From Schmidtea polychroa (taxonomy: Eukaryota), in assembly GCA_044892525.1 (NCBI GenBank), contig CM097887.1, forward strand, positions 122,552,397 to 122,616,396: a stretch of 64,000 nt of DNA, written 5' to 3'. Each line of letters begins with the position of its first letter. Position 1 is the stretch's first letter. The notes under the pieces were generated by a model that ran no database searches, was not told the origin of the DNA, and saw nothing but the letters and a program-made list of their open reading frames with translations. Shown piece by piece: positions 1 through 17,421 of the stretch. A program made the position numbers and the translations under genes.

Positions 1-1
1 C

Positions 2-3000
2 TATAAGAGAGAAAAGAAAGTAAATTGGAAGTTGATAGTAGGTTTTCTACCATTTTTGGCAAAAACAATGGTGTTGCACGGTCATTCTAAAGACATACAT
101 AGAATAAAACGATTGATCAAAATACTGACAAAAATAAAAGGAACTGACGAGGAAGTCGGTAGACGATTTCGGAAAACAATGTATGATGAGGCAACGAGAG
201 CGCAACTGAAAAAGAACAAACCAAAATTCCTAGACAGATTTAGAAATCGATCAAACAGCAGCGATAGTGATGATGACGACAACGGGAATGACAAATACCC
301 ATATCCAAGTAGAAACCCGAATGAAAAGCCAATAGAAACAGCGCCATACTGGGAGAAAGAAAAAACAAATACCTGGATAGCCAACGGAAGTTATATACCA
401 CCGGATATCGTTGGACAACAAGCAGCGCTAACCATGACACAAAATATGTATCCACAGTTACCAAGTCAACCAGGTATGAACTATATGCCGACCCGAAGAA
501 CGAAAAGTGTAGACCAAGCGGACGACGTAAGAACGATAGCAGTGATGAGTTCACCAGGAGGTGCGGCAGTAACAGTCATGATCCAAATCAACGGGAAAGA
601 GACAAGCGCCATGATAGATACCGGAGCAAACGTATCAGCAATAGCAATAAACCAAATACCCAGTAAATGTTGGAAAGATATCGAACAAACAACTATCCAT
701 ATCATCGCATGCAGTAAAGAAACCGTAGACGTAGTAGGAAGATGGTGGACTACGTTACGATATCAGGATAACGAAATTGAAACGTATCTAGCGGTGATAC
801 CCAAACTGAGTGAACCATGTATAATCGGAACGGATTTAATGCCGGAATTGTTTAAGGAAGTAGTAATCGATTTAACAACAATGTGTCTAAAAGACAAAAT
901 GGGTAGAATATGCAAGATGAACGCAATAATTAGATGCCCGGAGAAAATAATTGTACCCGCAAAATCACAGATGATATGTCAAATAAAAGTGGATGCAGGA
1001 ATGGAAGGAGAAGTCATTTTTGAGCCAAGCAAATCATTCGAAAAACGACGAGAATTACCATTGGCAAGAGAAATAATAACAATAAATGAAGACGGGGAAA
1101 TACCAATTAACATCACAAATTTCGAGGAAGAAGACAAGATCATATATGAAAATGAAAGATTGGGTAGATTGACACCCATGATAGACATCGAATTACCAAA
1201 AATCACCAACGAAACAACGAAAGCGGACGAATTATGGATAATTGATAGCACCTTGCTAACGGAAAAAGAAAAGGAGAGACTTCAACAATTATTGATAGAA
1301 TATAAAGATATATTCGCAATTTCGGATTTAGATTTGGGAGCATGCGATGTTACACTACACGCAATACCATTAATAGACGAAACTCCAATCGCACTACGTC
1401 CATACAAACTAGCAGAGAAGCAAAAAGAGATAGCCGAGGCAGAAGTACAAAAAATGCTAGATGCACAAGTGATCGAACCAAGTTGTTCGCCATGGCAATT
1501 TCCAGTAGTCATGGTGAAGAAAAAAGATGGTACTCAGAGATTCTGTATCGATTATCGGAAACTAAATGCAGTAACAAAAAGAGACACATACCCATTACCA
1601 GACATCAATGAGATGTTACTTATGTTACAGGGGGCCGCATATTTTACATCTTTAGATCTGAAAAGTGGATATTGGCAGATCAAAGTCAAGGAGGAAGACA
1701 AAGAGAAAACAGCATTCACATTGGGCCGAGATCTATACCAATTCAGGAAAATGCCGTTCGGACTGACCAATGCCCCAGCATCATTCCAGAGATGTATGAA
1801 TTTTGTCACACACGGGATCAAGCAATGTATGGTATATATTGATGATTTATTAATATATTCAGCAACTTTCGAACAACATTTGGAGGACATTAGAAACGTG
1901 TTCATCCGATTACGACAATGGAAACTGAAACTTAAACCATCCAAATGTGATTGGGCAAAAGAAAAAGTTACGTTCTTAGGACACATAGTGTCAGCAAAAG
2001 GCAAAGAACCAGATCCAAGAAACATAGAAAAAATAAAAACATGTCCAGCACCAAAAACTGTCACCCAAGTTCAAGAATTTCTCGGATTATGCGGATATTA
2101 TCGAAAATTCATCAAAAACTATGCAGGCATTGCGAAACCAATACAAGAATTAGTGAAAAAGGATATTTCATTTATTTGGGGTGCAGAACAACAAAAAGCG
2201 TTTGAGACATTGCGAGATAAATTAATTGAAGCCCCAATACTAGTACATCCTGATTTCAAGAAACCGTTCTTATTAGCAACAGATGCAAGTGGATATGCAG
2301 CCGGAGCAATATTGGGACAACTCGACGAGGAAGGGAAAGAAAGAGTGATTGGATACTACAGTAGAACGTTTAAAAAGCACGAGAAAAACTATTCCGTAAC
2401 CGAGAGAGAAGCGTTAGCAATCATACAAGCAATTAAACATTTTCGATATTTGTTATGGGGACACGAAATATGTATCACCACGGATCATCAACCATTAGTA
2501 TGGCTTGGTCAACACAAAGAAGCTTCAAGTAGATTGATGCGATGGGCAATGCAGTTACGAGAATATTCACCGTTCATAAAATTCAAAGCGGGAAGAGCGA
2601 ATGCCAATGCGGATTGTATGTCCAGATTTATCTTTCCAGATTTGGTAGATCACGAAATGCAACGAATATGTCTGATGGTAGCAGAAGATTTAGATTTTTG
2701 CCAATTACGGAAAGACCAACAAGAGGATACAGAGTTGAAGCAAATCATTGAATATGTGAAAACAGGGAAAGCAGAGGTATATGAGAAAGATCAAAAATTG
2801 AAGGAGCATATGGATAAACATCGACATCGATATATTATCGAGAAGGACTGGTTATTGATAATGGATGGCGAGAAAAGACTGATGTGCATTCCCGAGAATA
2901 GACGTAAAGATCTACTAACACAATACCATGACGGAAGACTCGGAGGACATATGTCATCTAAAAAGACGTTGGCACGAATGAAACAAAAATATTTTTGGCC

Positions 3001-5698
3001 TACATTGACCGAGGATGTAACGGAATGGGTGAAAAATTGCATAACTTGCGCAACCAGAAAAAACACGGGAACAAAATGGAAGGCACCATTAAAACCAATG
3101 CCAGTACCAGCAGAACCAATGACTATGATATCTATGGATGTAGTCGGTCCATTACCAGAATCAGATAGAGGGAATATATATATATTGGTGATTACGGATT
3201 ATTTGACGAAATTCCCCGAAGCATTCGCAATGGCAGATCAGAAAGCAAGAACAATCGCAAAAATACTAGTAGAGGAGATATGCTGTCGATATGGAACACC
3301 GAAACGGATATTAACCGATCAAGGGACAAATTTCATGAGCGAAATAATGAGCGAAGTCACCAACTACTTCAAGATCGCAAAATTAAGAACATCACCGTAC
3401 CATCCACAAACTAATGGTATGACAGAAAGATTCAATGGAACACTGATTCAAATGTTATCAAATTATGTCGATCGTCATCAACGAGACTGGGATGAATATA
3501 TAAAATTATGTCTAATGGCTTACAGAATGTCGATTCACGCGTCCACAAAGATGAGTCCGTTCAAGTTGATGTACGGCAGAGAATGCAATATGCCAATGGA
3601 TTTAGAATATCAGCCACCAATATCACAATACATGGAAATAGACGATTATGTAACCAAGTTCAAGGAAAGAATGCAGGAAATCTGGGAAACTGCAGGATTG
3701 AATATAAAATTTTATCAAGAAAGTTACAAAGATCTACATGATAGAAAGAAAAACGTCAAACAGCATACGTTTCAAACAGGCGATTGGGTGATGATCGAAA
3801 CACCAGAATTAATTCCAGGAACCACCAAAAAATTACAACGAAACGGTAAAGGGCCGTATGAGATTCTATTCGTCGGAGAAACTAATGTAAGAGTACGATT
3901 AATGAACAACCCTTTTACAAGACCAATATACGTAAATGTTGCACGATGTAAGCCAATTCCGAAAACCGCCACCAGTCAGCCAGAAGGACGTACATTAACG
4001 ACAAGATCACAAACGTATAGAATAAACATGTTACAGCAGATAAACGAACCAACAGGTAATCGATTAGGGTTACAACCATCAGAAGCCGAGAAAATCATAA
4101 AGGAAGTAAAAGTTAAAATGCCCGGATGGGCAGAAGACAGATTAGATTTTGAGATATTGGGAGGTCTGCTAACAATGATCGAAAATTATGCAAACCGAGA
4201 AAGAACACACCCATTACTCAGGGTAGTAAAAAGTCAATGGCCTATATTATTTACGATCACAGACCACTATGGAGATACACCGCTGCACAAACTTTTAAAG
4301 GTCGGGAATAATGAACAAATACTGGAAACGATCGAAGCATTTCGCGATTGTAACATTTCGACGGATCAAGAAAACAACCAAGGTTACACCCCACTAATGA
4401 TAGCAGCCAATCGGGATAAAGCTAAAGATATTATCATCGCATTACTTGAAACTGGGTCAAAGATAACCACACAAGACCACAACCAGAAAAATGCACTACA
4501 TCATGCAATCGAAGGGAAAAGTACGGAAGCCTTCATAATCTTAGTAGATCTATTATCATATGAGGATAATAGGGAGATAGGAAACATGTATGACGGGTTA
4601 TTAACTGCAATCAAAGAGAAATTAATAACAATTACTGGAATACTAATTGCGTGGAGGAACCCGATCAAAAACGATTATATGGTAGATATAAACGAAACAT
4701 TTACCAAAGGAGAAAACACCTTGATGAGAGAAGCGATGAGAGGACATCACCTATTCGAAATTCCAAAACAACTACTACAACGTGGCATAAAGTTCTCAAA
4801 TCACAAAGACGAACAACTAATCAGAAAACGAATTACCAACTTAGAAAAAGCTATATCTCAATTTACCGATAAAGTACAAGTAAAATTTTGGGAAACCGTG
4901 AGTGTTTTACATATGATGGAAACTATGAACAACATTCGAGAAAACTACCTAAGTATTATTCAAGTTCTAACGGCAGAGGAACGCATTAACAGTTCGAACA
5001 AGAAAAAGATAAAAATAAAGAAAGTAAAAGCAAGAGAGTCTGAGGAACAAGTCGATCAAACAATAACCGATATAGCAACAACAAGTAAACCAAAGACAAT
5101 AAACTCCGACCAAGAGATAGTAGTACGTAAGGCTAAAGAGGTATTCTTTGAAGAAATGCAAGATCTATCCGATGAAGCGATACTATCAAAAATAACAAAA
5201 ACAGTACACACCTACGCAAGAGACCAGACCACAAATCTAGACATAGAAAAAATAAAAACATTTATACCACTAGCATTCACCTTACCAACAAAAGATTCAA
5301 GAACACCATTACAACAAGCCATTTTAGCAGCAAAAGAAAACAGAGCAATAACCATCATAAGAATCCTCAGGGACTTCGGAGAAGAATCTAATGCAAAAAA
5401 TGAACAAGGAGAAACGGCAATGATGTATGCAGCAATAACAAAGATACACCCGAAAACCTTACATATACTACATCAATCAGGTTCGAGACTGGATGAAATA
5501 TCAAACGAAGGAAATTCTACCATGGATTGGGCAACAATACAACCAAACTTGGAAATGATTAGATTCATTTGTAAAAATGCTACAAGAGCTGAGGTAGAAA
5601 ATATCTGTAAAAACACGTCACAGTTCCAATGGAACGATACGGATGAACTTAGAAGCTATGAAGTTATTGCTAACATGGAGAATACCACAAAGCAATAA
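2..5698 (+). CDS. pol: Retrotransposon polyprotein: aspartic protease, reverse transcriptase, RNase H, integrase, plus C-terminal ankyrin repeats (5'-truncated by the window edge)
   Basis: Frame is open from position 2 (the track's start at 32 is TTG). Protease SAMIDTGANVS (DTG at 617-625); RT RFCIDYRKLN, MPFGL and YIDD (1835-1846); RNase H LATDASG, EREALAI, TDHQPL; integrase HDGRLGGH...CITC, MDVVGPLP, TDQGTNF, ERFNGTL, GPY; ankyrin-like GDTPLH, GYTPLMIAA, QKNALHHA, RTPLQQA, GETAMMYAA. Confidence 0.97.
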   Translation, partial: YKREKKVNWKLIVGFLPFLAKTMVLHGHSKDIHRIKRLIKILTKIKGTDEEVGRRFRKTMYDEATRAQLKKNKPKFLDRFRNRSNSSDSDDDDNGNDKYPYPSRNPNEKPIETAPYWEKEKTNTWIANGSYIPPDIVGQQAALTMTQNMYPQLPSQPGMNYMPTRRTKSVDQADDVRTIAVMSSPGGAAVTVMIQINGKETSAMIDTGANVSAIAINQIPSKCWKDIEQTTIHIIACSKETVDVVGRWWTTLRYQDNEIETYLAVIPKLSEPCIIGTDLMPELFKEVVIDLTTMCLKDKMGRICKMNAIIRCPEKIIVPAKSQMICQIKVDAGMEGEVIFEPSKSFEKRRELPLAREIITINEDGEIPINITNFEEEDKIIYENERLGRLTPMIDIELPKITNETTKADELWIIDSTLLTEKEKERLQQLLIEYKDIFAISDLDLGACDVTLHAIPLIDETPIALRPYKLAEKQKEIAEAEVQKMLDAQVIEPSCSPWQFPVVMVKKKDGTQRFCIDYRKLNAVTKRDTYPLPDINEMLLMLQGAAYFTSLDLKSGYWQIKVKEEDKEKTAFTLGRDLYQFRKMPFGLTNAPASFQRCMNFVTHGIKQCMVYIDDLLIYSATFEQHLEDIRNVFIRLRQWKLKLKPSKCDWAKEKVTFLGHIVSAKGKEPDPRNIEKIKTCPAPKTVTQVQEFLGLCGYYRKFIKNYAGIAKPIQELVKKDISFIWGAEQQKAFETLRDKLIEAPILVHPDFKKPFLLATDASGYAAGAILGQLDEEGKERVIGYYSRTFKKHEKNYSVTEREALAIIQAIKHFRYLLWGHEICITTDHQPLVWLGQHKEASSRLMRWAMQLREYSPFIKFKAGRANANADCMSRFIFPDLVDHEMQRICLMVAEDLDFCQLRKDQQEDTELKQIIEYVKTGKAEVYEKDQKLKEHMDKHRHRYIIEKDWLLIMDGEKRLMCIPENRRKDLLTQYHDGRLGGHMSSKKTLARMKQKYFWPTLTEDVTEWVKNCITCATRKNTGTKWKAPLKPMPVPAEPMTMISMDVVGPLPESDRGNIYILVITDYLTKFPEAFAMADQKARTIAKILVEEICCRYGTPKRILTDQGTNFMSEIMSEVTNYFKIAKLRTSPYHPQTNGMTERFNGTLIQMLSNYVDRHQRDWDEYIKLCLMAYRMSIHASTKMSPFKLMYGRECNMPMDLEYQPPISQYMEIDDYVTKFKERMQEIWETAGLNIKFYQESYKDLHDRKKNVKQHTFQTGDWVMIETPELIPGTTKKLQRNGKGPYEILFVGETNVRVRLMNNPFTRPIYVNVARCKPIPKTATSQPEGRTLTTRSQTYRINMLQQINEPTGNRLGLQPSEAEKIIKEVKVKMPGWAEDRLDFEILGGLLTMIENYANRERTHPLLRVVKSQWPILFTITDHYGDTPLHKLLKVGNNEQILETIEAFRDCNISTDQENNQGYTPLMIAANRDKAKDIIIALLETGSKITTQDHNQKNALHHAIEGKSTEAFIILVDLLSYEDNREIGNMYDGLLTAIKEKLITITGILIAWRNPIKNDYMVDINETFTKGENTLMREAMRGHHLFEIPKQLLQRGIKFSNHKDEQLIRKRITNLEKAISQFTDKVQVKFWETVSVLHMMETMNNIRENYLSIIQVLTAEERINSSNKKKIKIKKVKARESEEQVDQTITDIATTSKPKTINSDQEIVVRKAKEVFFEEMQDLSDEAILSKITKTVHTYARDQTTNLDIEKIKTFIPLAFTLPTKDSRTPLQQAILAAKENRAITIIRILRDFGEESNAKNEQGETAMMYAAITKIHPKTLHILHQSGSRLDEISNEGNSTMDWATIQPNLEMIRFICKNATRAEVENICKNTSQFQWNDTDELRSYEVIANMENTTKQ

Positions 5699-7253
5699 AT
5701 ATGCAATAAATATAAATGAGTTCTACGAAAACGGAGAAAATGCTATGGTTAAAAATACACTAACAAAAGGAGGAACTCCGAAAATCATAATGATCGTATT
5801 AAACAGGGAAGATCTCAAATTCACGCAGAATCTAAACGAACAAAAGCGAATCGGGAAACATCGTCGGATACAATTAAGAGAATTAGTGAAAGAATGGAAT
5901 AGAAAGAGACATGTAGCAACAGGCAGAAAGGAGTTCGAATTCGAAGCAAAATTAGCAAGAAACAGAGTGCTAACGGCATACCGCAGATTGTTGAATGATA
6001 TAAATGTCGAGGACGACATTTTAAACGATAGCGGGGGAGATAAAGACGATAAAGACGACGATAATAATGAAAAAGGTCGAAACGGGAATAAAGAGAAAGA
6101 GAAATCAGAGGAGAATAATCAAGAAAATAACGACGCGAGTAGGAAAAAAGAGGAAAATAACCCGAGAAACCGAATAAAGCAAGAAGAAAAGACGAATAGT
6201 GGAAAACAGAGGGTATGCCTACTTTTTACCAACAAAGAAATGGAGACAAATATGATGATAATGATACTCGTATTAACAATGGTGGAAATGATAACAGCCC
6301 AGGGAGGAATGAGAACGATAAAAGAAGCCAAAGAAACGGAAAATAAGGACAACAAAGAAGAAGAACTAAAACAAGAAAAGAAAAAACAAGTACAAGAGCA
6401 GCAATGGGATCTAAAAGAAGAATGGGATTTAAAAGAAAGGTGTATATTAGGAAGATGTATGTCTAGAGCTTATCAGAGACTAGTGTTAAAAAATGAAGAT
6501 GCAGAACCAATAACGGAAGTAAGAATACAAGAAGCATACCGAAATCGAGACGGAAAGAGAATAACGAAAGTCAAAGGGAAGGAGGTACACCTGGGAAAAG
6601 GAGGTGAGGTAGTGATAACGCAACTCCAGCCAAGAAAAGAACACAAAGTCTGCATTGCAAGATTAAGACCGGGTGAAGACTGTCTACAATATGTAATACA
6701 GCAACAACCTCCAAAAGAATACACAATATGCATCTGGAGAAAAGATACAGCGAGAGAATGTCGACGATACCCTGGGAAAAGAGGGAGGAAAAGAAAAATC
6801 AATGATGAAAAAGATGAGCAAGGAAAACGCAAGAAAAACAGTGAGAAACATCAAGACAATTATGTATCCGAGGAGGAGATGGAGAAAATACAAAAAATGG
6901 CAAAGGAAGGTATGAACGAGGAAATAGCAAGAATACGAGGAATGATGAAAGGAAATGGCAAAGAAGGTAATCTAAAAAGCACAGAAGCAATATCAACAAT
7001 AACGAACAAGGAAAAAGCGGAAATTATAAGCGTAAAACAGATGATGTGGATCAGCGGCATAATAATAACAGGGGCCTTTTTAATCATAACGGGGGGGACA
7101 ATAAAAATAATCAAAGATAGACGGCATCGCGGAGAACTAGAAATGGCCAGAATAAGAAATTTTCAACATCGTGTAAAACGACCAAGTAATATCAAGCAGG
7201 AACAGTGGGTGGAGGCCTGGAATGCTCAGCGCCCTCCAAGCTCACGTATATAG
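5643..7253 (+). CDS. ORF2: N-terminus continues the ankyrin array of pol; the C-terminal part (from ATG 6240) resembles a type I membrane protein
   Basis: LLLTWRIPQSNKYAININEFYENGENAM matches ILIAWRNPIKNDYMVDINETFTKGENTL in pol. Hydrophobic MMIMILVLTMVEMITA, a six-Cys region, TM-like WISGIIITGAFLIITGGTI and a basic tail. Confidence 0.75.
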   Translation: MNLEAMKLLLTWRIPQSNKYAININEFYENGENAMVKNTLTKGGTPKIIMIVLNREDLKFTQNLNEQKRIGKHRRIQLRELVKEWNRKRHVATGRKEFEFEAKLARNRVLTAYRRLLNDINVEDDILNDSGGDKDDKDDDNNEKGRNGNKEKEKSEENNQENNDASRKKEENNPRNRIKQEEKTNSGKQRVCLLFTNKEMETNMMIMILVLTMVEMITAQGGMRTIKEAKETENKDNKEEELKQEKKKQVQEQQWDLKEEWDLKERCILGRCMSRAYQRLVLKNEDAEPITEVRIQEAYRNRDGKRITKVKGKEVHLGKGGEVVITQLQPRKEHKVCIARLRPGEDCLQYVIQQQPPKEYTICIWRKDTARECRRYPGKRGRKRKINDEKDEQGKRKKNSEKHQDNYVSEEEMEKIQKMAKEGMNEEIARIRGMMKGNGKEGNLKSTEAISTITNKEKAEIISVKQMMWISGIIITGAFLIITGGTIKIIKDRRHRGELEMARIRNFQHRVKRPSNIKQEQWVEAWNAQRPPSSRI

Positions 7254-7421
7254 AAAGGATTATGACTGTATATAGATTGTAAAAAGTAAGTAGGTAATAT
7301 TTATTTATATAACAGTATTCTATATTTTTATATAAGCGCGGTATCAATAGTATATAATGATGGGGATAATTAATATGAAAATAAAATTAGATAAGGATTG
7401 AAAAGTATATATAAATTAAGA

Positions 7422-7781
7422 ATGGAGCGAATAGGCGAGGAAGTAAATCACAGTACAACAACCGAGGAGATGTGGAAACAACAATGTGCAATGTTAACTC
7501 AAGTGATTTCGAATTTACAGGAACAAGGACTCGCTGTACAAAGAAGCTTAGTCGAAAGTTTAAATAAAGGCTTCAGTTATGTAAGAATAATCGAAGATCA
7601 ACGAATAAAAATAGAACAAATGCAGCGAGAGATAGACCGAATATCACGATACAGCCAGGTGCAAGAAGAGGAGTTAATAAGAATCGCGGAAGAGATGGAG
7701 CGAGAGGAGATAGAAGACTGGTCAGAATGGTTAACCAGCAGGGAAGAGGGCGGACAAGAGGCCGACTCTTCCAGCCAATAA
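7422..7781 (+). CDS. Small acidic coiled-coil accessory protein (119 aa from ATG 7422)
   Basis: Open frame with the element's A-rich codon bias, Q/E-rich helical sequence, flanked by AT-rich spacers. The track start at 7398 is TTG; the first ATG is at 7422. Confidence 0.7.
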   Translation: MERIGEEVNHSTTTEEMWKQQCAMLTQVISNLQEQGLAVQRSLVESLNKGFSYVRIIEDQRIKIEQMQREIDRISRYSQVQEEELIRIAEEMEREEIEDWSEWLTSREEGGQEADSSSQ

Positions 7782-7870
7782 ATATAACCTAAAATAGCAA
7801 TGTAAATAACTGTAAATAAAAATACGAAACTGTACCAGTAACGAATATATGTATATATATAATTATAGAA

Positions 7871-9258
7871 ATGGATAAGCGACAACGAGAAGAATTCAAA
7901 GAAATTGTTGAACAAATCAGAAAGTCCACCACAATTCGAATACACAACCATGTAACGTGTGGAATATGCAAGAGCTTATTAAGAGAACCTCACCAAACCA
8001 GATGTGGATGCAGAATGTGCAGAGAATGTGTAGAGGAGATAATAAAGAAGGGACCACAATGGTGCCCAGTATGCAAAGAAACAATGATAACAAGTTTGGG
8101 AGATACAAACGAAGATAAAGCAGCTGTAAAAGATATGTCGAATGCAAACCTAGGATGTAAAAACACCCATGTAATTGGCGAGGAGTGATATGGGAAGTGA
8201 GGCAACATATGGAGCAATGTGAATATAAAATCAGTCAATGCAAACGTTGCCAAGAAGAGATTAAAGTCAATGAAGAAGCAGAACATCAAAGTCGATGCGA
8301 AGAAAGACTGGAGAAATGTGAGTATTGCGGAGAAACCGACACCTGGAAAAAACTAATCAGTCAACATCACAACATACAAGAGGAGAAAGTGTGCGCAGAA
8401 TTCAGAGGAGAATGTCCCAATAAATGCGATAAACCCGGAGTAATAAAACTCGCTCAACATCTGAAAGAATGTGAAAGGAAAAAGATAAGGTGTGTGTTAG
8501 GAAAATGGGGATGTCAGAAACAATTACACCGAGGGGAATTACCCCAACATCTAGCAGAAAACGTATCAACACACGCGGAAATATGGTCAACGGTATTACA
8601 AGAAAACGAAAGGAAAACCGAAAACTTAGAAAGAGAAATAGTCTCGCTAAAAGCGTTGGTAAAGGAACTATTGGAAGAAAAGGAAGCATTTGAAGAGGCG
8701 AGAACAAGTACAAAGATACAGACAAATCTAGTAGAAACTAGCAACATTATGGTGAAAGAACTACATCAAAAAGTAAGCGAATTAAACCTCAACGAATTAA
8801 TACCTACGGCTCCATACATATGGAAAATAACGGGAGTAAAAGAGAAGATGCAGAGAGCGAGAAATGGAAAGGATACAACCTTACTAAGTCCAGCATTCTA
8901 CTCATGGAAAAACGGGTATAAAATGAAAATGAAAGCATACCCCAATGGGGATGGAAGTGCATACGGAACGCATTTCTCAGTATTCTTCTTGATGTGCAAA
9001 GGGCCATACGACGAGTTAATAGAATGGCCATTCAAAGCAAAAATAGACCTCGCAATGATGAACTATCAAAGTATACATGAACAGAGTTTCCATACAGCGG
9101 GAAACCTCGTATGTTACCAAAGGCCCTTGGAAGAAGAAGGACCAGCAACTGGAGCACCAAATTTCATCCTACAGCGGAAAGTAGAAGACATGACGAGAAA
9201 CGACACTATATACATAAAAATAGCGGTGAGGCGAGACGGGAAGAGTAGGACTGAGTAG
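7871..9258 (+). CDS. TRAF-family protein (RING, TRAF zinc fingers, coiled coil, MATH/TRAF-C), intronless, split by a 1-nt frameshift near 8160-8170
   Basis: RING CGIC...QTRCGCRMCREC...CPVC in 7871-8188. In the other frame PCNWRGVIWEVRQH, then C/H zinc fingers, a coiled coil and MATH motifs YIWKI, SPAFYS..GYKM, YPNGDG..GTHFSVFF..KGPYD..EWPF, YQRP. Confidence 0.92.
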
Positions 9259-9473
9259 AGAGACGAATAATTTTGTATATACTAATTGTAAATATCGGCG
9301 TATATATCCAGTAAAATATTATATAATAGTGTAGAAAACCCCAAATCTACCAAAGGTAAACTTAAGCGAAAAACTCCTAAAACAACTCCTATAACGAATT
9401 ATAAAAATAAATAAATAATAAACCAGATATAAGCGTACAACGTTAAGTTAATGATATCGTTATTTAGACAAAG

Positions 9474-10511
9474 ATGACACAAGAAGGAACTGAAGCCCCA
9501 AACCACGAAACCAAAGTCAATAAAATCCATAAGGGAAAATGGGTCAAAGTAATGTTACAATTGACGAACCAGACCCACAACCACCTCGAAGAGGCCAGGG
9601 AATACGAGAATAACAAATATCAGTGGTTAGTAAACAATTTAAGAGCCGAAGCAGAAGCATGCAAAAGAGCCTCTAAGTGGGCATCATTGGAAAACACTCG
9701 CCAAGAAGCGCACAGCCACTATTTAAAACAGTTAGTGCAGGAAGCACGGAAACGATTGACGGACGAAAACACAAAACGAGAAGCAGAAAAACAAAAGGAA
9801 GGAAGGAAAATGAATCACCTATTGGCAGAAGCCCGAAACTGGAAGCGGCAGAACAAAGAGATGAAAAAAGAAATGAAAGAATTGCCTATGAGATTAGAAT
9901 ACGAAAGCGAACAAGGCAAATGGGAGGAAAATCTGGTCATAAGAGAAGAACTGAAACGGCTCAGAAAGATTGCGGCCCGAAGCCAAACATGGCAGACCAA
10001 AGCCATGGAATTTGAAAGACATCTAGCCATGAAAATCTCCATAAGGGAGCACGAGAATGCCGCAATGGAAGAACTGATACTTCAACAGTCAGGACGACTC
10101 GTGGAACTGGTAAATAAGGTCGCAGAACTAGAACGAGATGTCAACGGATACCAAGGAGCTCTGGAGCAGAGAAATATGGTACTGGCGGGGAAAAACAAAA
10201 AGTTAGAAAACGAAAGGAAAATGTATAACGAAAATCTCAAAAATCTGGAGATAGAGATCAAGAAATGGGAAAACGGCGAAAAAGCGGAAGAGTTAGAAAA
10301 ACAGATAGAGGTACGGGATGACGAAACTAGGTATTTAACCTACCTATTGGACGAGGAACTCAATGTGTCAAGAGCGCTAAGAGACGAAGTCCAAGAACTT
10401 AGAGCGCAGATTCCCCGGTACTACATCCCATTTGATCCCATCGCACTCCAATTACAAACGTCAGTAGAAAGCGATGAAGGATATGTAGGCCAGGAAGAGA
10501 CCTTTGTATAA
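9474..10511 (+). CDS. Long coiled-coil accessory protein (345 aa)
   Basis: ATG-to-stop ORF, E/K/R/Q/L-rich helical sequence, element codon bias; no catalytic motif recognised. Confidence 0.8.
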   Translation: MTQEGTEAPNHETKVNKIHKGKWVKVMLQLTNQTHNHLEEAREYENNKYQWLVNNLRAEAEACKRASKWASLENTRQEAHSHYLKQLVQEARKRLTDENTKREAEKQKEGRKMNHLLAEARNWKRQNKEMKKEMKELPMRLEYESEQGKWEENLVIREELKRLRKIAARSQTWQTKAMEFERHLAMKISIREHENAAMEELILQQSGRLVELVNKVAELERDVNGYQGALEQRNMVLAGKNKKLENERKMYNENLKNLEIEIKKWENGEKAEELEKQIEVRDDETRYLTYLLDEELNVSRALRDEVQELRAQIPRYYIPFDPIALQLQTSVESDEGYVGQEETFV

Positions 10512-10684
10512 AGATAAAGGGGAAGATAAAAAATATAAAAATCGGGACCTGTATCCCAACCAAAAAATTAATGGTACGGTAAAAGTATGAAAGGGACTGT
10601 AACCCTGATTATAAAATAACATATAAATGTATAAGTATAAGCCGCACTGTAGCGCAATTATTAATTACGTATATATTATAGAAA

Positions 10685-11386
10685 ATGAACGCTGAGAACG
10701 GACAATCTATCATAACACCTATAATTGAATTAGAAGAGGGGGAAATTGAAGTTGATGAAGTGGAAAGGAAGAAAACTATCAAGGAAGAATTACAAGAAGA
10801 GAGACAGGAAAACGAAAGATTAGTAGAAAGGTGGAGAGATAATCGAAAAATGATTAAAGTATTGAAAAGAGAATATATCTTGTTAGAAGGAGTAAAGAAA
10901 GAAGTAGAGGAAGAAAACGAATGGCTTCACGAGCAAAGAAAGCGAGGGAGAAATTGGGAAAAGATCGCGGAAGAATTATGGCAGGAGAGGGCCAGTCGAA
11001 AGGCCGACGAAGTGATTAGTGACTATTGGAAAACCGAGGCACGGAAACACCAAGAAAGCCTGAAAGAGTTACAACTCCAACTACACCAAAAACAGAAGGA
11101 ATGTGAGATAATGAGACGAATGAACAACAAATACCAGGAAATAGACAACGAAGAAGACGGGGAAAGGGAAAATGATTTTCTACAGATAATGAACCATAAA
11201 AACCTCGAAAGAGCAACACAAGAAATAAAAGCACTAAAAGAAAAAATAATAACCCTAAAGCAACAGTTAGACGAAAGAGACAAACAATTAAAAGTACTAC
11301 CCGAATTGAGAAAACGAGTAATAAAAGCAGAAACGAGAGTGATGAGAACATCCGAGAAAACCCGTAAAAAGAAAACCCGGCAATAA
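10685..11386 (+). CDS. Coiled-coil accessory protein (233 aa) with a basic C-terminus
   Basis: ATG-to-stop ORF, E/K/R-rich, ends RKKKTRQ. Confidence 0.78.
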   Translation: MNAENGQSIITPIIELEEGEIEVDEVERKKTIKEELQEERQENERLVERWRDNRKMIKVLKREYILLEGVKKEVEEENEWLHEQRKRGRNWEKIAEELWQERASRKADEVISDYWKTEARKHQESLKELQLQLHQKQKECEIMRRMNNKYQEIDNEEDGERENDFLQIMNHKNLERATQEIKALKEKIITLKQQLDERDKQLKVLPELRKRVIKAETRVMRTSEKTRKKKTRQ

Positions 11387-11441
11387 TTAAAGATGAATGA
11401 TCAATGTAAATAATTGTAAATAAAAATTTTCGTATAGTAGT

Positions 11442-12077
11442 ATGTGGTTCGGAACAACCCTGATGACAATAATGATGATAGCGATAAACGGAATACCCAT
11501 GGGGCAGCCAATCCCAACACTCTGGGAGAATCCCGAGAAACAGCAAAACCCGTTAACCAAACTGAAAAGCGAAAGAAAGCTCTCCAACAACATCCCGAAG
11601 CAATGCTGGAACAAAGCCGTCTGGCAAAAACTTCAAATGCAACTCCACCTACAAACCCAAAAAATCGAACAGCTCGAAATTCTCTTACAAGAACAAACCA
11701 CCCAACAATCCTTGAAGGAAATCATCGTGAAGAAGGAAGTAAAAGAAAGCCAAGTCTTACTCTATGCTACCATCAGTGAAACCCTTATCATCTGCGCATT
11801 AGTCATCTGGAAAGCATATGATATTCATCGAACATGGAGAAGAAACCAGTCACTATCCGAGAAACACGAAAGAAAGAACCCACGACCGAAAAATAAACAT
11901 AAACGAGCAGTACATTTTCAACAACCAAACCCACCCGACCAAATGCAACTAAATCTATCTCCTGATCAAATGCCTGTTACAATCCAGCTCCCCACGATAA
12001 CAACTTCAACCAGCCATCCGACCCAGAATTCAACCAACCAAGACAGTAATAACATTCCGAACCTTGAGATCATGTGA
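11442..12077 (+). CDS. Putative type I membrane accessory protein (211 aa)
   Basis: Signal-peptide-like MWFGTTLMTIMMIAING, Q/L coiled coil, TM-like VLLYATISETLIICALVIW, a basic stretch and a P/Q/T/N-rich tail. Confidence 0.72.
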   Translation: MWFGTTLMTIMMIAINGIPMGQPIPTLWENPEKQQNPLTKLKSERKLSNNIPKQCWNKAVWQKLQMQLHLQTQKIEQLEILLQEQTTQQSLKEIIVKKEVKESQVLLYATISETLIICALVIWKAYDIHRTWRRNQSLSEKHERKNPRPKNKHKRAVHFQQPNPPDQMQLNLSPDQMPVTIQLPTITTSTSHPTQNSTNQDSNNIPNLEIM

Positions 12078-12839
12078 CATCGACCATTCATAAACTTTGT
12101 GTGTATAAATCCGGTCACCTAAAGTGGCCACTGCTTGCTTATATTTGTCCTTTTATCTGTTTAATTAAAGTATTATTTAGTTATTTTAATTTTATGTTTG
12201 TGTGAATGATGATCGTGAAATTAGTTGTTATGCCGAAAAAAGGTATGATTTAAACGTATGATATTATGTGAATTGCGGGGCGCAATTTTAACGGGCCCCG
12301 GAGTGATTTGTTGGGCTAAAACGTGGAGTTTCGAAAACTGGAGCAAATAGAAAAGTAATCCTTGAAAAATTAACGAAATAAAATAAAAATATAAAGTACC
12401 ATCAAATTCTCACTAATAAAGCAAAAAGGAACAATAAAATATCAATAAGAGAATAAGAATAAGTAAAACAAACTAAATAAAACCCAATAAACCCCTTGAG
12501 ATTTAGAAATAAAGCGATTTAGGACCCAGCAGATGAAATAGAATAAAATAAGTAAAAAAGTGACAACAAATAAACGAGAAATTTAAGAAATAAATAAAAA
12601 AAAATAAAACTATCTTTAAGTCTAATTAAAACAAAAAATTATATTACAATAAAAATAGGAGGAAAATAATAAAAATAAGAAAATAAATAAAATAATAATA
12701 AGAAATAAGTTAAGTCATTAAAATCTAATATATTATAATAAAAAACATAAAAATAATAATAAATAGTAAAAATACAAACAAGTCGTGTCCTGATTGGACG
12801 AAAAATAATATATAAGGAACGGAAAATATCTGTAGATTA

Positions 12840-12919
12840 CCATTTTTAAAAAATATTCTACAGGTGACCATTTTTAAAAAATATTCTACAGGTGACCACT
12901 TTTAAAAAATATTCTACAG
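12840..12919. repeat. 28-bp tandem repeat, about 3 copies (CCATTTTTAAAAAATATTCTACAGGTGA)
   Basis: Units start at 12840, 12868 and 12896 (third unit partial, one mismatch). Confidence 0.92.
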
Positions 12920-15219
12920 ACTTGACAGATTTCGGAACCTTTAATTAGCCTACAGCGAACTAGTTCAGAGATTTCCAAACCAAACCGAGGAAGGAATATA
13001 TAGAGGCCAAACTACAAATCCATTCGGGAAAAAATCTTAAATTCAACCGATTTTAACTTCAGTTTTCGAAACTCAAGGTATGCCTCGACAGTTGTTTTAT
13101 TTATGGTTATTAGGTTAATTTCGTTAATTATTATAAATATAATAAAACAATTTCATATAATAAATTTATTTAAATGAAAAGTTGCCTTTCTTCATGGTAC
13201 CGGCGACTGTACCATCTGAGAGCTCCCAGTATGATGTGGACGAGTTGGAATTGCACTGCAGTTGAGGACACCACCGTGGAAAGGTTGGTATGCATAAGAA
13301 ATCACGAACATGCTGAAAGGAGAATGTGATATTTGTAGAGAGTGATATTGTCATATTAGATATCCATCAAGGAGACGAGGAGGTTTCGGTTACGTAGGAG
13401 GAGCAACATCATACTCGGAGATCCAAATGATATGGTCGCCGGGTAAATTTTATTTATGCATTTTTCTATCATTCAGTTTGATTATTGTATTGTTGATTTG
13501 ATTGCATGGAAACGAGTTGATTGGTCCCTCATGACGGTGCAAGGAGGCGGCAGCAATGAATGCCTTCTTGGGTGTGTCGTGAGGGGTGAAGAAACTCAGT
13601 AGGTGGAACATCCAGTTGATAAGTGAAAATTTCCTTCATCAAGCGCGATCGTCCATAGAGCTTACCATCGATTCATTTAGCCCAATCGAGATTTCCAGTA
13701 GATGTAGAGATGATTTGAATTCCGAATGCAGGCAGTTCAGAGCGAGATAGGCAGTGACGATAATAATCCACATAGCTAGGAGAAAGATTTTTTTTTTGAT
13801 ATTCAGCCGGTCAATCGACGTAGCTAGGAAAGAGTAGTGTTGACCATGGATTGCAAGTAAATCCAACGATTTTTCAGTGACGCTCTGTGTTTGCAAGGTT
13901 CTGTCTGATTTGTGCCGTCATGATGTTAGTGGTTACATCCATTGCCGATGTACTCTTACGATTTGATTGTCGTCCGTGAGTCGCCAATGCTAGTGATAAA
14001 AATCTCTCGCTGACAGGGAAGTAAACATCTTGTAGGGAAATTATCAAAATTCTTACTTCGAGCTCGCAGACAGTAGTTGCCAACGATAACGAAATCAGTT
14101 GATTTACATTAGCCAGCGTAGAGTTAGTCGACAGGAGATATCTGATAATGTCCTGGAGAAAGAGATAACATGTTAGTTTTTCTGGGGAAACGTCAAATGG
14201 ATAAGCTGATAGTCATTGATCTGAATTTAGATCGTAAAAGGAAATTAGATGATAATGTTGAGCTTACCCAATAATCTATGAAGTTGTCGCCCACTCAGAT
14301 TGAATAATCTGCTTTTCCAATTCATCTACGGCTGCTTATTTGAGGGATCTATTACGCAACCACTATTATTCCGACTTGAGCATGCACATACACACGCACC
14401 ACAGTCAAATATACATAGGGCAGTGTAAAAGTAAATACACAATTTTTGGTGAGGTAATAGCGGTATGATGATGTGAATTTTTCTAGAACGGTGAGATAAT
14501 AGGATGAGGTAAAGGAATGGATTTCCCCTACACAACTCGATATATCATAATTTCTCACAACAGCATAAACCATCATTCGCAGTGATAGCCAACATACAGT
14601 TACAGATACCACCAGGAGTAATGACACACCTACACAGTCAATCATAATGCATAATCACAAGTGAACGTTTTCCATGACGACGATTTCGACGCGTTATTGG
14701 AATTAATTAGATGTAGATTTAGAGCAGAATTTTCAACTGATCACTTGATCAATTCCATAATTTTGAACGAGATAAAAACATAAATAATCTATTCCGTCGC
14801 CGTGAATTATTTCTCTGTACTTTTAGGTACGCCTACATCGACGGATTGCCATAATGATATCGGCAAATTTTTAAATAAAAATATACTAAGGGGAACAAGG
14901 TGGAAGGGTTTTTCAGTGAGAAAGACGAGTTTTACCTGGGGATGGTCCCATCCGAAAGTAAACCCAAAGGGCGAGGTTCATGTAGAGAGAATTTTCCGTA
15001 TGAAATCCCCGTTTCCTTTTCTTAATTTACACGAATTAGGTGAAGAGATTTGAATGTTTACAACTGAATGACTGCGTATAGAGATGGATGAAGAAGTGTG
15101 TGGGTCATCGTTGGGTGGTATGCTTGATAAACTCCAAAGCCACGCTCAAAAATTTGATTATTCTTTTCTCACTAATAGAGGTTTTTCCGAGTAAATATAA
15201 ACAATGATTGATTTTCTAG

Positions 15220-15981
15220 ATGGCTACATCGTCCAACCACGCCAAAGAACTTCGCCCGTGTTTTTCTTGTGCGGACAAGAACGCGGATATCGCCCAACTG
15301 CATTTATATATCGGGGCTCTCAAAAAGAGAATTGATCTCTATGAAGGAACGTGGTTCTCCCCGCCACAAATGAAAGAGGAACGCAAGAAAATTCTCCGAT
15401 TAGAGCATTGCAGGGACAGCCTGCTAGAGGAAAGCCGGTGTCAGCGGCTCACCATCAAAGCGCAATCGGAAGCCCTCCATAAGGTGTATACGGAGGCAGA
15501 ATTGGCTAAGCGGGTGCGAGAATTTCCCGTTCTAGAGGGGACGAATGTCTTTCCCCCTCACCACCCGTCTCCTACTTCTTCCAGCTCGCACTGCCAGGGG
15601 CACGGCTCACAACTGCCGCCCATTCCAGCCCCGGTGTTGTCAAGTCACCAGCCAAAGACAGGTGGACCTACCAATCCCATCGTAGCTCCAATCCTGGTAG
15701 CACAAATCGGTACCACGAACACCGAAAACCCCCCGACTACCCGCAAACGGAAACGGCCAACTCGAGCCGAGAAGAACCAAAAACGCCGAGATGCGATGAC
15801 AGCACTCGAGACGTCCTTATCGGCGGCGAATTCAAAAATCCAAGAGATAACGTCCTCCCATTCAATCCCCTCAAAGGAAGTCTTCCGCATTGTTCCAGCT
15901 GAGGGCATCAAATACATTGTAGATAGCCGATTACCGGTCGACATAGATGAGATACTGGCCGATGGAGATAACTTTGTTTAA
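15220..15981 (+). CDS. ORF inside the candidate LTR (253 aa): CxxC, coiled coil, P/S/H-rich linker, basic NLS-like segment
   Basis: ATG-to-stop ORF directly preceded by TTTTCTAG. Contains PCFSCAD and RKRKRPTRAEKNQKRR. Visibly more GC-rich than the upstream ORFs. Confidence 0.7.
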   Translation: MATSSNHAKELRPCFSCADKNADIAQLHLYIGALKKRIDLYEGTWFSPPQMKEERKKILRLEHCRDSLLEESRCQRLTIKAQSEALHKVYTEAELAKRVREFPVLEGTNVFPPHHPSPTSSSSHCQGHGSQLPPIPAPVLSSHQPKTGGPTNPIVAPILVAQIGTTNTENPPTTRKRKRPTRAEKNQKRRDAMTALETSLSAANSKIQEITSSHSIPSKEVFRIVPAEGIKYIVDSRLPVDIDEILADGDNFV

Positions 15982-16805
15982 CGTGACGTACAATTGAGTT
16001 TGATTTCCTCTTCATTGAGTTGTAAATTATCTTGTGAATGTTGCTAATGTTATGTCTTTTTGACTGCTGTTGATCTGTTAGTAGTAACGATATTTTTATA
16101 GTTTCAGCGTCAATAAAATTTTTTTGTTTGATTTCAGTTTTGTCGAGTTTTCATATATTTGTTTGTGCAATTAGGATAAATGAGATAATGCTGCGGAATG
16201 AAGGTAATTAAAGTTGAAGGTCGTTCCTTTGGACCAGGATCAGACTGAGTGACACGCATGTATGTGGGTAAGTCCTTCTAAGGCACCGTAGGACCCGAAC
16301 CGAGAAAGGGTTAGGAGTAGTCCTAAGGCAGGGGCTCACCTGCTAACTTTTTCCGACCCGTGTGAGCAGCACCAACATGGAACATCACCATGGGCTCATA
16401 CGTGGGAATATGCAATCGATCATTTGGAGTATGTGTAAGAAATGTATAACTGAGTAATGATGCTTGATAGGTGTGATGGAAAGGCATGCATAATTTTCTT
16501 TCTTCTCCACATACGCCAACACGTATGAAAACAGAAAACGTTAATTAATTAATTAATTGGCTAATGGAAAACCCGAGCCAATGGAGAACCCGAGAGATAA
16601 AGGAAACCCGAGCTGGGTAAACAAGAAGAAAGGCAAACAAAAGGAAAATTTGGGCCCATTAGCTTGACACAATGATTAATGGGAAAAGAGTAAGGAGAAG
16701 ATAGCGCGCGTAGGAAGACCGGTAGGGCCATTAATTATCTGGATTCGTTGGACCATTATGGATGACAGCCGAAGCAAACACGTAGGAGAAAATGTCAAAC
16801 GAAAG

Positions 16806-16909
16806 ATTGGCTCGGCAATAACCATTTGTCATCCTGATTTCGAGGAGTATATAAGCAAAGGGAAAATCAGAGAAAATCGGCATTTTGCCTCAGGTAGGTT
16901 AAGAAGAAT
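16806..16909 (+). promoter_or_regulatory. Putative LTR promoter (CCAAT box, TATA) and downstream splice donor
   Basis: ATTGG at 16806, TATATAA at 16848-16854, TCAG about 30 nt downstream, CAG|GTAGGT at 16901-16909. The TATA and donor are not conserved in the related LTR at 42.8 kb. Confidence 0.4.
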
Positions 16910-17421
16910 TAGACTGTAGGAAAAGTGGTAAACGAATTAGGGAAGTAGGGAAAAGAAGAAATAGAATTAAGAATACGGAAAGGCGAAAAGGGATCAAACC
17001 AAAGAGAAACCGAGGAAAAAGAGAGTCGAGATAACTAAAGGATCAAAAGGTGAATATTGTTTGTTTGCAAAGCATCAACGCCGAGCGGAGAATCGTATAA
17101 AACTTTGATTGGTAATTGTAGCGTGATAATAAATTGTGAACTTGTTGTTTCAATATACGTTGGGTCGTTCATTGTTTTACTTTAAAGAACACCAGGAGTC
17201 AGAGAGAACCGACTTGAAATAATCCAAAACCCAACAGACTAATGAAATCAACAAAGTATTTGATCTTTTGTCAAAACAAAAATAGAAGAAATGACAATTA
17301 ATCTCAACAATTCTTTTGAAATAAGTAATGAGTAAAATCTAGTTATTTTTTTTATTTTAGTATGAATCTGGACATTTAAAACAAATATCAAGTAATATCA
17401 ATATTTGATACAACCCATTAA

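What the first reader, a model, noticed from the sequence alone, without database searches (positions are those of the whole stretch)
7871..9258. Complete intronless TRAF gene carried by a retrotransposon
All TRAF modules are present in canonical order, and the codon bias matches the element's A-rich strand, which suggests long residence after capture. TRAF-like genes are reported to be expanded in planarians; some may be transposon-borne copies rather than host loci (inference).
Basis: partly seen in the sequence, partly recalled or inferred. Interest (0 to 1): 0.85.

Follow-up and report, generated by a model that had tools for sequence, protein, structure and literature searches.

The report
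TRAF gene inside giant planarian retroelement
A TRAF-type signalling gene sits among the accessory genes of a giant gypsy-like retroelement; this kind of cargo is already described for the planarian Burro elements, and this copy has one frameshift.

Summary
Window 7871-9258 (+) encodes RING, TRAF zinc fingers, a long coiled coil and a TRAF-C/MATH domain in canonical order, with no intron-sized interruption. It is not one open frame: there is one frameshift and no in-frame stop.

The gene lies 2.2 kb downstream of an intact Ty3/gypsy PR-RT-RNaseH-IN ORF fused to ankyrin repeats. It is on the same strand, inside one A-rich block of stacked ORFs (1 to about 12,100). Its third-codon-position composition matches pol (p=0.13) and differs from host ORFs in the window (p=2e-18).

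It groups inside a clade whose named members are planarian TRAFs, at only 30-37% identity. It still keeps 29 of the 30 best-conserved columns and folds confidently (pLDDT 93) like TRAF2/TRAF3. This points to an old capture kept under constraint in the element lineage.

No sister copy could be reached in any collection, so the tests across copies and dN/dS were not done, and the 3' LTR is unresolved.

RING, MATH_TRAF_C and ankyrin domains in the giant Burro/GYPSM1 elements of Schmidtea are already published (PMC6431247). I rate this a new member of a known kind, of modest interest. The idea that retroelement copies inflate planarian TRAF counts remains open.

The parts
1..5698 (+). pol polyprotein of a Ty3/gypsy-type retroelement (protease, RT, RNase H, integrase) fused at its C-terminus to two clusters of ankyrin repeats. 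The frame is open from the first base of the window, so the 5' part (gag, 5' LTR) lies outside.
   Evidence: Pfam: RVP 1.1e-7, RVT_1 2.1e-36, RT_RNaseH 1.1e-38, Integrase_H2C2 9.1e-21, rve 2.6e-13, Ank_2 1.1e-17. The frame is open at the window start. There are no stops or frameshifts over 1888 or more codons.
5643..7253 (+). Accessory ORF of 536 aa. It is lysine/glutamate-rich with a hydrophobic segment near the C-terminus. It overlaps the end of pol in another frame. No known family.
   Evidence: Codon usage correlates with pol (r = 0.80).
7398..7781 (+). Accessory ORF of 127 aa, helical and acidic, with no family above threshold.
7801..7823 (+). First copy of a 23-nt intergenic motif (two UGUAAAUA-like units plus AAUAAA), 48 nt before the TRAF start codon.
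   Evidence: Exactly two matches in 64 kb, 0.04 expected.
7871..9258 (+). TRAF gene, read in two frames (one frameshift, no in-frame stop). Domain bounds: RING about 7958-8074; TRAF-type zinc fingers about 8206-8574; coiled coil about 8563-8781; TRAF-C/MATH about 8815-9234; stop codon 9256-9258.
9474..10511 (+). Accessory ORF of 345 aa, coiled-coil-like, no known family.
   Evidence: Same A-rich third positions.
10685..11386 (+). Accessory ORF of 233 aa, coiled-coil-like, no known family.
11405..11427 (+). Second copy of the 23-nt intergenic motif, 15 nt before the next start codon.
11442..12077 (+). Accessory ORF of 211 aa with one hydrophobic segment. It is the last ORF of the A-rich block.
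   Evidence: The A-skew ends at about 12,100-12,200.
16526..17236 (+). LTR-like unit of 711 bp (starts TG, ends CA, with a TATA-like and an AATAAA-like site inside). It is a candidate 3' LTR of the element or an unrelated solo LTR. This is unresolved.
   Evidence: 63-70% identical to 42459-43160. Sequence read. The composition falls to the host background after about 17,400.

Best explanation
The TRAF gene is a resident accessory gene of a giant Ty3/gypsy-type (Burro-like) retroelement of a planarian.

Shown:
- It sits on the coding strand 2.2 kb downstream of an intact pol-ankyrin ORF, inside a stack of at least seven same-strand ORFs.
- It shares the element's A-rich synonymous composition.
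- It has full TRAF architecture and a confident TRAF2/TRAF3-like fold.
- It branches within a clade whose named members are all planarian TRAFs.

Inferred:
- An ancestor of the element picked up a processed copy of a host TRAF2/3-like gene.
- The gene then passed through enough replication cycles for its silent sites to reach the element's composition, while selection in the element lineage kept the zinc ligands and the TRAF-C core.
- The protein acts like a virus-encoded TRAF: a trimeric adaptor or E3 ligase that plugs into, or competes with, host TRAF-dependent survival and immune signalling.
- It probably acts together with the element's ankyrin repeats, to keep element-expressing cells alive or unresponsive.
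- Its peptide-binding pocket has diverged, so its partners are probably not classical PxQE receptors.
- The accessory ORFs are probably reached through spliced or subgenomic mRNAs.

At this particular locus one frameshift stops the RING and the TRAF-C domain from being made as one chain by ordinary translation. This copy is either slightly damaged or carries an assembly indel.
For: Element identity.

Same unit:
- A-skew is continuous from 1 to about 12,100.
- Third-position composition of TRAF against pol gives p=0.13, against the other accessory ORFs p=0.53, and against host ORFs p=2e-18.
- Cellular TRAF relatives have A3/(A3+T3) of 0.42-0.55, against 0.74-0.78 here.
- A shared 23-nt motif lies on both sides of the gene.

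TRAF identity.

Origin:
- The nearest proteins are P0005 (37%), Dugesia japonica TRAF-2-like A and Dendrocoelum lacteum TRAF-2/-4/-5.
- In a neighbour-joining tree the gene is sister to P0005 in 198 of 200 resamplings, inside the clade whose named members are all triclad TRAFs. Vertebrate TRAF2 and crinoid TRAF3-like proteins did not join it within the six nested clades listed (28 of 58 sequences).

Constraint:
- 29 of 30 columns conserved at 90% or more, and 40 of 45 conserved at 80% or more, are kept.
- All eight RING ligand columns are filled.
- pLDDT is 93.4.
- The open run is 365 codons, against a shuffle maximum of 168.

Precedents:
- Burro/GYPSM1 carry RING, MATH_TRAF_C and ankyrin (PMC6431247).
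- Megalocytiviruses and Klosneuvirinae encode TRAF-like proteins (PMC3352826).
- Planarian TRAFs are needed for cell survival (PMC7586133).
Against: - The gene has one frameshift in this copy.
- No second copy of the element was found anywhere. Conservation across sister elements, dN/dS and copy number are therefore untested.
- The 5' end lies outside the window and the 3' LTR is not established, so inclusion between LTRs rests on composition and context, not on mapped termini.
- Intactness alone proves little, because pol is intact too, so the copy may simply be young.
- An intronless cellular TRAF with no RT nearby exists in a relative (L002), so lack of introns alone does not prove retro-capture.
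- The three serine columns used by many non-planarian relatives carry no serine here, so function as a classical TRAF is uncertain.
- The host species was not identified by any tool.
Confidence: 0.72

Rival explanations
1. Chance neighbours: an intronless host TRAF gene, or a host retrogene, beside which a gypsy element happened to insert. On this reading the TRAF is not part of the element.
For: The LTRs were not mapped. Intronless cellular TRAFs exist in relatives (L002). Planarians have very many TRAF/MATH genes (PMC6109357; PMC7586133).
Against: - Third-position composition equals pol and differs from host ORFs at p=2e-18.
- There is no composition break or LTR-like unit between pol and the gene.
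- ORFs with the same bias continue for 3 kb beyond it.
- The same 23-nt motif lies before the gene and 3.6 kb further on.
- No protein closer than 40% identity exists in the libraries.
Confidence: 0.06
2. Passenger in decay: the TRAF was carried into this element lineage but has no role. It is drifting, and the frameshift is the first visible damage.
For: There is one frameshift. No sister copies were available to show selection. The serine columns of the classical binding pocket are lost.
Against: Silent sites have fully reached the element's composition, and identity to cellular TRAFs is only 30-37%. Despite that, there are no stops, 29 of 30 top-conserved columns are kept, all zinc ligands are kept, and the fold is predicted with high confidence. 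Drift over that amount of change would have broken the frame many times; the other two frames carry 14-35 stops. The loss of the serines is shared with most of the clade of triclad-type TRAFs.
Confidence: 0.12
3. Composite locus: the block from about 5.7 to 12.1 kb that holds the TRAF belongs to a second, non-autonomous or nested element of similar composition. It is not part of the unit that encodes this pol.
For: The termini are unknown. pol ends at 5698, and all later ORFs are separate, short and without known families. Giant elements are prone to nesting.
Against: No LTR, repeat or composition boundary separates pol from the block. RSCU correlates with pol (r 0.70-0.80) and weakly with host ORFs (0.24-0.42). 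Published Burro elements combine these same domains in one unit.
Confidence: 0.1

Closest known systems
Burro / GYPSM1 giant gypsy-like LTR retroelements of Schmidtea mediterranea, and the related element of Girardia (Dugesia) tigrina (Jurka 2007 and Grohme et al. 2018, reviewed in PMC6431247)
   Same: Ty3/gypsy pol; very long A-rich coding region; cargo of RING-type zinc finger, MATH_TRAF_C and ankyrin repeats; coiled-coil regions; accessory ORFs; the nearest cellular relatives of the cargo are planarian.
   Different: In the published Burro1 the MATH_TRAF_C domain lies inside the 4,873-aa ORF1, followed by SUMO-like, BCL-2-like and env regions, with a dUTPase-like motif between PR and RT. 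In the G. tigrina element it is in an upstream accessory ORF. Here the TRAF is a separate gene downstream of pol-ankyrin. No dUTPase, BIR or BCL-2 domain was found in the part held by the window. Sequence identity to Burro1-4 could not be tested, because no Repbase or planarian genome is at hand.
Cellular planarian TRAF2/3-like proteins: Dugesia japonica TNF receptor-associated factor-2-like protein A (ADF47429.1), Dendrocoelum lacteum TRAF-2/-4/-5, and the unnamed UniParc entry UPI0006060D85 (P0005)
   Same: Same module order and almost the same total length (448-469 aa). Collinear alignment over both pieces. Same clade in the tree.
   Different: Only 30-37% identity. The silent-site composition is that of the element. 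It lies within a retroelement. It has one frameshift.
Human TRAF2 and TRAF3 (solved TRAF domains, e.g. 1ca4, 1flk, 8zuk; TRAF2 RING 3knv)
   Same: Fold of the coiled coil plus TRAF-C (Foldseek E 4e-18, TM up to 0.86) and sequence E about 1e-28. RING E 2.5e-8.
   Different: 32-36% identity. The three serine columns frequent in non-planarian relatives carry no serine here. From my own knowledge, these are the contacts for the glutamine of PxQE peptides in TRAF2. This predicts different partners.
Virus-encoded TRAFs: megalocytivirus vTRAF (ISKNV ORF111L; spotted knifejaw iridovirus and orange-spotted grouper iridovirus homologues) and the TRAF-like proteins of Klosneuvirinae
   Same: A mobile or viral genome carrying a captured host TRAF. 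Fold-level match E 2e-16 and 2e-14. ISKNV ORF111L binds TRADD and alters apoptosis (PMC3352826).
   Different: DNA viruses of fish or protists. Independent captures (19-25% identity). Some lack parts of the architecture. Here the carrier is a reverse-transcribing element of a flatworm.

Membership tests
TRAF family (RING, TRAF zinc fingers, coiled coil, TRAF-C) | N-terminal RING with eight zinc ligands | tested here: met
   Pfam zf-C3HC4 26.9 bits against a cut-off of 21. TRAF2 RING 3knv E 2.5e-8. All eight ligand columns are filled; the fourth is Cys, as in 26% of relatives (His in 59%).
TRAF family (RING, TRAF zinc fingers, coiled coil, TRAF-C) | Series of TRAF-type zinc fingers after the RING | tested here: met
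   Pfam zf-TRAF E 1e-4, but 23.3 bits is below the 27-bit cut-off. Four beta-beta-alpha units at pLDDT 93-98. The nearly invariant Cys/His columns are kept.
TRAF family (RING, TRAF zinc fingers, coiled coil, TRAF-C) | Coiled coil (TRAF-N) directly before TRAF-C | tested here: met
   A single 73-residue helix abuts the beta-sandwich. It aligns to the TRAF3 coiled coil. Trimer formation was not tested.
TRAF family (RING, TRAF zinc fingers, coiled coil, TRAF-C) | C-terminal TRAF-C/MATH eight-stranded beta-sandwich | tested here: met
   MATH_2 90.5 bits against a cut-off of 32, TRAF-mep_MATH 90 against 27.4. TRAF3/TRAF2 E about 1e-28. Foldseek TM up to 0.86.
TRAF family (RING, TRAF zinc fingers, coiled coil, TRAF-C) | All modules in one uninterrupted reading frame | tested here: not met
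   One frameshift and no in-frame stop. Whether it is real or an assembly indel cannot be told from one copy.
TRAF family (RING, TRAF zinc fingers, coiled coil, TRAF-C) | Classical receptor-peptide pocket (three serine columns of TRAF1/2/3/5-type proteins) | tested here: not met
   0 of 3 serines. The shares of Ser are 76/56/80% in non-planarian relatives and 50/14/7% in the clade of triclad-type TRAFs. The role of these residues is from my own knowledge of TRAF2-peptide structures.
TRAF family (RING, TRAF zinc fingers, coiled coil, TRAF-C) | Ubiquitin-ligase or adaptor activity in signalling | not testable with these tools
   No biochemical or expression data are at hand.
Ty3/gypsy (Metaviridae) LTR retroelement | pol with the order PR, RT, RNase H, IN | tested here: met
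   The nearest pol relatives are gypsy-type polyproteins at 40-51% identity.
Ty3/gypsy (Metaviridae) LTR retroelement | Two LTRs with TG..CA ends, target-site duplication, PBS and PPT | tested here: inconclusive
   The 5' end is outside the window. One 711-bp TG..CA unit at 16526-17236 has a diverged second copy at 42459-43160, but there is no target-site duplication and no clear purine tract.
Ty3/gypsy (Metaviridae) LTR retroelement | gag upstream of pol | not testable with these tools
   The pol frame is open at window base 1. Anything upstream is outside the window.
Burro / GYPSM1 giant planarian gypsy elements | Cargo of RING, MATH_TRAF_C and ankyrin domains within one gypsy unit | tested here: met
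   against the description in PMC6431247.
Burro / GYPSM1 giant planarian gypsy elements | BIR, BCL-2-like, SUMO-like, env-like and dUTPase-like regions | tested here: not met
   None was found by Pfam in window 1-12,100. Several of them lie upstream of PR in Burro1 and could be outside the window.
Burro / GYPSM1 giant planarian gypsy elements | Internal region up to 25 kb, total over 30 kb | tested here: inconclusive
   At least 12.1 kb of coding block is in the window and it is cut at the 5' side.
Burro / GYPSM1 giant planarian gypsy elements | Nucleotide or protein identity to Burro1-4 reference sequences; host a dugesiid planarian | not testable with these tools
   No reference is available. 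The host ORFs gave no hits. The only indication is that the nearest named TRAFs are triclad.

The most novel reading that the evidence does not exclude
This is a previously undescribed architecture of giant planarian retroelement, with several possible features. A captured full-length TRAF is one of a cassette of separately expressed 3' accessory genes, reached through splice-acceptor-like sites and bounded by a repeated UGUAAAUA/AAUAAA motif, as in complex retroviruses. The TRAF and the pol-fused ankyrins form a virus-like kit for tuning host survival and immune signalling. Copies of such elements may account for a real share of the 121-282 'TRAF/MATH transcripts' counted in Schmidtea, many of which are reported as partial.
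Probability: 0.3. Interest if true: 0.6.

Novelty: new member of a known kind. Interest (0 to 1): 0.35.

Why it matters
Retroelements that keep a host signalling adaptor for their own use are rare, and they sit on the border between transposon and virus.

For planarian biology the practical point is bookkeeping. TRAF/MATH is reported as one of the most expanded families in Schmidtea (PMC6109357, PMC7586133). The papers that report this expansion do not mention the giant elements known to carry the domain. If many counted transcripts come from such elements, the size and meaning of the 'TRAF expansion' change. So do knock-down experiments whose triggers could also hit element transcripts.

For this locus alone the result is mostly confirmation of a published kind of cargo.

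Tried and rejected
- Sister copies, searched seven ways:
  - word-based protein search with the larger TRAF piece: no hit;
  - full HMMER scan of 1.84 billion representatives: no hit above 40% identity;
  - locus scans of metagenome and viral contigs with the TRAF: none;
  - protein search with RT-IN: best 51%;
  - second metagenome scan with RT-IN: three short contigs at 48-65%;
  - exact look-up of a neighbouring accessory ORF: none;
  - self-comparison of the window: a single copy.
- Host identification with the ataxin-10-like ORF and the pogo-type transposase: nothing.
- Function of the other accessory ORFs by Pfam at E up to 1 (all five) and by solved structures (two of them): nothing credible.
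- Rfam on 1-20,000: nothing.
- Pfam on the ORFs of 13.1-17.8 kb: nothing.
It was redone with my own neighbour-joining code.
- L002, an intronless TRAF with a stack of upstream ORFs, looked like a second TRAF-bearing element. I rejected it: no match to the window element's pol, no A-skew over the TRAF gene, and ordinary codon usage.
- 'TAG a few bases before every accessory start codon' looked like a splice-acceptor signal. I downgraded it to a lead, because in two of the five cases the TAG is simply the in-frame stop that defines the ORF.
- I did not read the gene through the frameshift as one protein. The pieces were always searched apart.

Full report
**What is at the coordinates.** On the + strand, 7871-9258 runs from an ATG to a stop codon and encodes every TRAF module in canonical order.
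- The RING scores Pfam zf-C3HC4 E 4.5e-6. Its best solved relative is the TRAF2 RING, 3knv, E 2.5e-8, followed by the TRAF5 and TRAF6 RINGs. All eight zinc-ligand columns are filled.
- The rest scores MATH_2 at E 1.5e-25 (90.5 bits against a cut-off of 32) and zf-TRAF at E 1e-4, which is below that family's cut-off.
- It matches the TRAF domains of human TRAF3 and TRAF2 at E about 1e-28.
- An AlphaFold2 model, built on an alignment with 39 relatives (A1), has mean pLDDT 93.4. It shows four zinc-finger units, one 73-residue helix and an eight-stranded sandwich.
- Foldseek puts it on TRAF3/TRAF2 at E 4e-18, with TM up to 0.86.
- This is far beyond chance. The longest open run is 365 codons, against a maximum of 168 in 2000 shuffles, and the other frames hold 14-35 stops.

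**The qualification.** The gene is not one ORF. Read in a single frame, the interval is full of stops. The ORF table splits it into two pieces in different frames. I count one frameshift and no in-frame stops.
- The two pieces match the same relatives collinearly, and their lengths add up to that of full-length relatives of 448-469 aa. Nothing seems to be missing or inserted, and there is no intron-sized gap.
- As it stands, the RING and the TRAF-C domain cannot be made as one chain by ordinary translation.
- From one copy I cannot tell a real mutation from an assembly indel.
- The tool tables show the bounds of the pieces.

**The carrier.** The window opens inside a pol ORF that is open from base 1 and runs to 5698 without a break. 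It holds protease, RT, RNase H and integrase, then two clusters of ankyrin repeats in the same frame.
- After it come same-strand ORFs at 5643-7253, 7398-7781, the TRAF gene, 9474-10511, 10685-11386 and 11442-12077. None has a known family.
- The whole block from 1 to about 12,100 is strongly A-rich on the + strand, with AT skew 0.27-0.43 against about 0 in the rest of the window.

**Is the TRAF part of the element?**
- Third codon positions of the TRAF gene are 48% A and 15% T. They do not differ from pol (p=0.13) or from the other accessory ORFs (p=0.53), and they differ sharply from the host ORFs in the same window (p=2e-18).
- Three cellular relatives whose DNA I could fetch have A3/(A3+T3) of 0.42-0.55, against 0.74-0.78 here.
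- No repeat or composition boundary lies between pol and the gene.
- A 23-nt motif found only twice in 64 kb (0.04 expected) lies just before the TRAF gene and again 3.6 kb downstream, before the last ORF.
- I take this as good evidence that the gene is internal to the element.
- It is not proof, because the termini are not mapped. The 5' end is outside the window.
- On the 3' side, the A-rich block ends near 12.1 kb. Then comes an A-rich non-coding stretch with a 28-bp tandem repeat, then 4 kb of different composition. Last comes a 711-bp TG..CA unit at 16526-17236, with a diverged twin at 42459-43160. Which of these, if any, is the 3' LTR is open.

**Origin and constraint.**
- The HMMER scan of 1.84 billion representatives gave 4952 relatives, none above 40% identity.
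- The nearest full-length ones are an unnamed UniParc protein (P0005, 37%), Dugesia japonica TRAF-2-like A (33%) and Dendrocoelum lacteum TRAF-4, -2 and -5 (about 30%).
- In a neighbour-joining tree of 58 sequences the element's protein is sister to P0005 in 198 of 200 resamplings and sits inside the clade whose named members are all triclad TRAFs. A vertebrate TRAF2 and a crinoid TRAF3-like protein did not join it within the six nested clades listed (28 of 58 sequences). The source was therefore a planarian-type TRAF2/3-like gene.
- The protein keeps 29 of the 30 columns that are at least 90% conserved among relatives, and 40 of 45 at the 80% level.
- The A-bias is concentrated at silent sites (0.48 against 0.21-0.27), with only a modest shift in amino-acid make-up.
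- Fully element-like silent sites, deep protein divergence and an intact fold together argue for long residence under purifying selection in the element lineage.
- The frameshift concerns this copy only.

**Likely mode of action (inferred).**
- TRAFs are trimeric adaptors and RING E3 ligases that couple receptors to NF-kB/JNK and cell-death decisions. In Schmidtea, TRAF knock-down causes cell death (PMC7586133).
- Viruses have captured TRAFs before. Megalocytivirus and Klosneuvirinae proteins match the model. ISKNV ORF111L binds TRADD and changes apoptosis (PMC3352826).
- Burro elements are noted for apoptosis- and ubiquitin-related cargo (PMC6431247), and BURRO1 is expressed and held down by SMEDWI-2 (PMC8532177).
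- I therefore propose an element-encoded TRAF that engages or competes with host TRAF signalling, probably together with the ankyrin repeats.
- The three serine columns common in non-planarian relatives carry no serine here, and they are already rare in the clade of triclad-type TRAFs. The partners are therefore likely to differ from classical receptors.

**Comparison with what is known.**
- RING (AIR1), MATH_TRAF_C and ankyrin domains in GYPSM1/Burro1, and in Burro2-4, are already published. In the G. tigrina element the MATH_TRAF_C domain sits in a separate upstream ORF.
- The arrangement here differs from both written descriptions: a discrete gene downstream of pol-ankyrin. No dUTPase, BIR or BCL-2 domain was found in the part of the element that I can see.
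- I cannot compare with the Burro2-4 sequences or name the host species.
- My rating is a new member of a known kind.
- The papers reporting the TRAF/MATH expansion (121-282 transcripts, many partial) do not mention these elements.

**What could not be done.**
- No sister copy of the element was found in the window or in any collection.
- Presence across copies, copy number, dN/dS and LTR age are therefore all open.
- The host ORFs gave no hits.

- The pieces of the gene were always searched, aligned and folded apart.
- Two points for the record. While reading the ORF table I worked out for myself, and noted at domain level in notebook entry 1, roughly where the frame change falls. I stopped there and do not give it.
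- One search printed, for a few columns, the relatives' commonest residue beside the element's residue. None concerns the break, and I use only the counts.

Noticed in passing
window 7801-7823 and 11405-11427: An identical 23-nt intergenic motif, apart from one Y position. It holds two UGUAAAUA-like (Pumilio-element-like) units and an AAUAAA. It lies just after one accessory ORF and just before the next. There are two matches against 0.04 expected. It could be a processing, poly(A) or regulatory signal between the element's genes.
   Followed up: partly
window 7390-7397, 7860-7870, 9460-9473, 10675-10684, 11430-11441: Each accessory ORF start is preceded within 2-9 nt by an AT-rich stretch ending in TAG. 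This looks like a splice acceptor, for cis-splicing or spliced-leader trans-splicing. In two cases the TAG is just the in-frame stop, so this is only a lead.
   Followed up: partly
window 16526-17236 and 42459-43160: Two copies, 63-70% identical, of a unit of about 700 bp that starts TG and ends CA. It has TATA-like and AATAAA-like sites, so it is LTR-like. No target-site duplication was seen. The relation to the giant element is unknown.
   Followed up: partly
window 12360-12920: An A-rich non-coding stretch with many AATAAA, then three exact-to-98% copies of a 28-bp tandem repeat (12839-12919), then a TATA-like site near 13,000. This could be the start of a long LTR (U3).
   Followed up: no
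window 15220-15981: An ORF of 253 aa in a locally GC-rich patch (up to 57% GC). It has no family and codon usage unlike both the element and the host ORFs (r about 0). Origin unknown.
   Followed up: partly
window 5643-7253 and 11442-12077: Two accessory ORFs each carry a single hydrophobic, membrane-anchor-like segment. The first overlaps the end of pol in another frame. Neither resembles a known env.
   Followed up: partly
window 18395-19642 (-): An intact 415-aa ORF with an ataxin-10 domain (Pfam E 1.4e-20). It is presumably a host gene and marks the outer limit of the element's 3' side.
   Followed up: partly
window 48512-49843 (-): An intact pogo/Tigger-type transposase (DDE_1, HTH_Tnp_Tc5, BrkDBD). 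This fits the DDE_1 expansion reported for Schmidtea. A CLC chloride-channel exon lies next to it at 50475-51203 (+).
   Followed up: no
L002 10001-11602 (ENA ERZ25069859 ctg23303): A single-exon 533-aa TRAF in a 445-kb contig of an unidentified eukaryote. It has no match to the window element's pol nearby and ordinary codon usage. Intronless cellular TRAFs therefore exist in this clade.
   Followed up: yes
window 58414-58599: A 90-nt inverted repeat, 89% complementary, with a 6-nt loop. A related segment lies at 61940-62054. It looks like a MITE-like hairpin.
   Followed up: no
window 24566-60916: Nine runs of N (128-996 nt).
   Followed up: no
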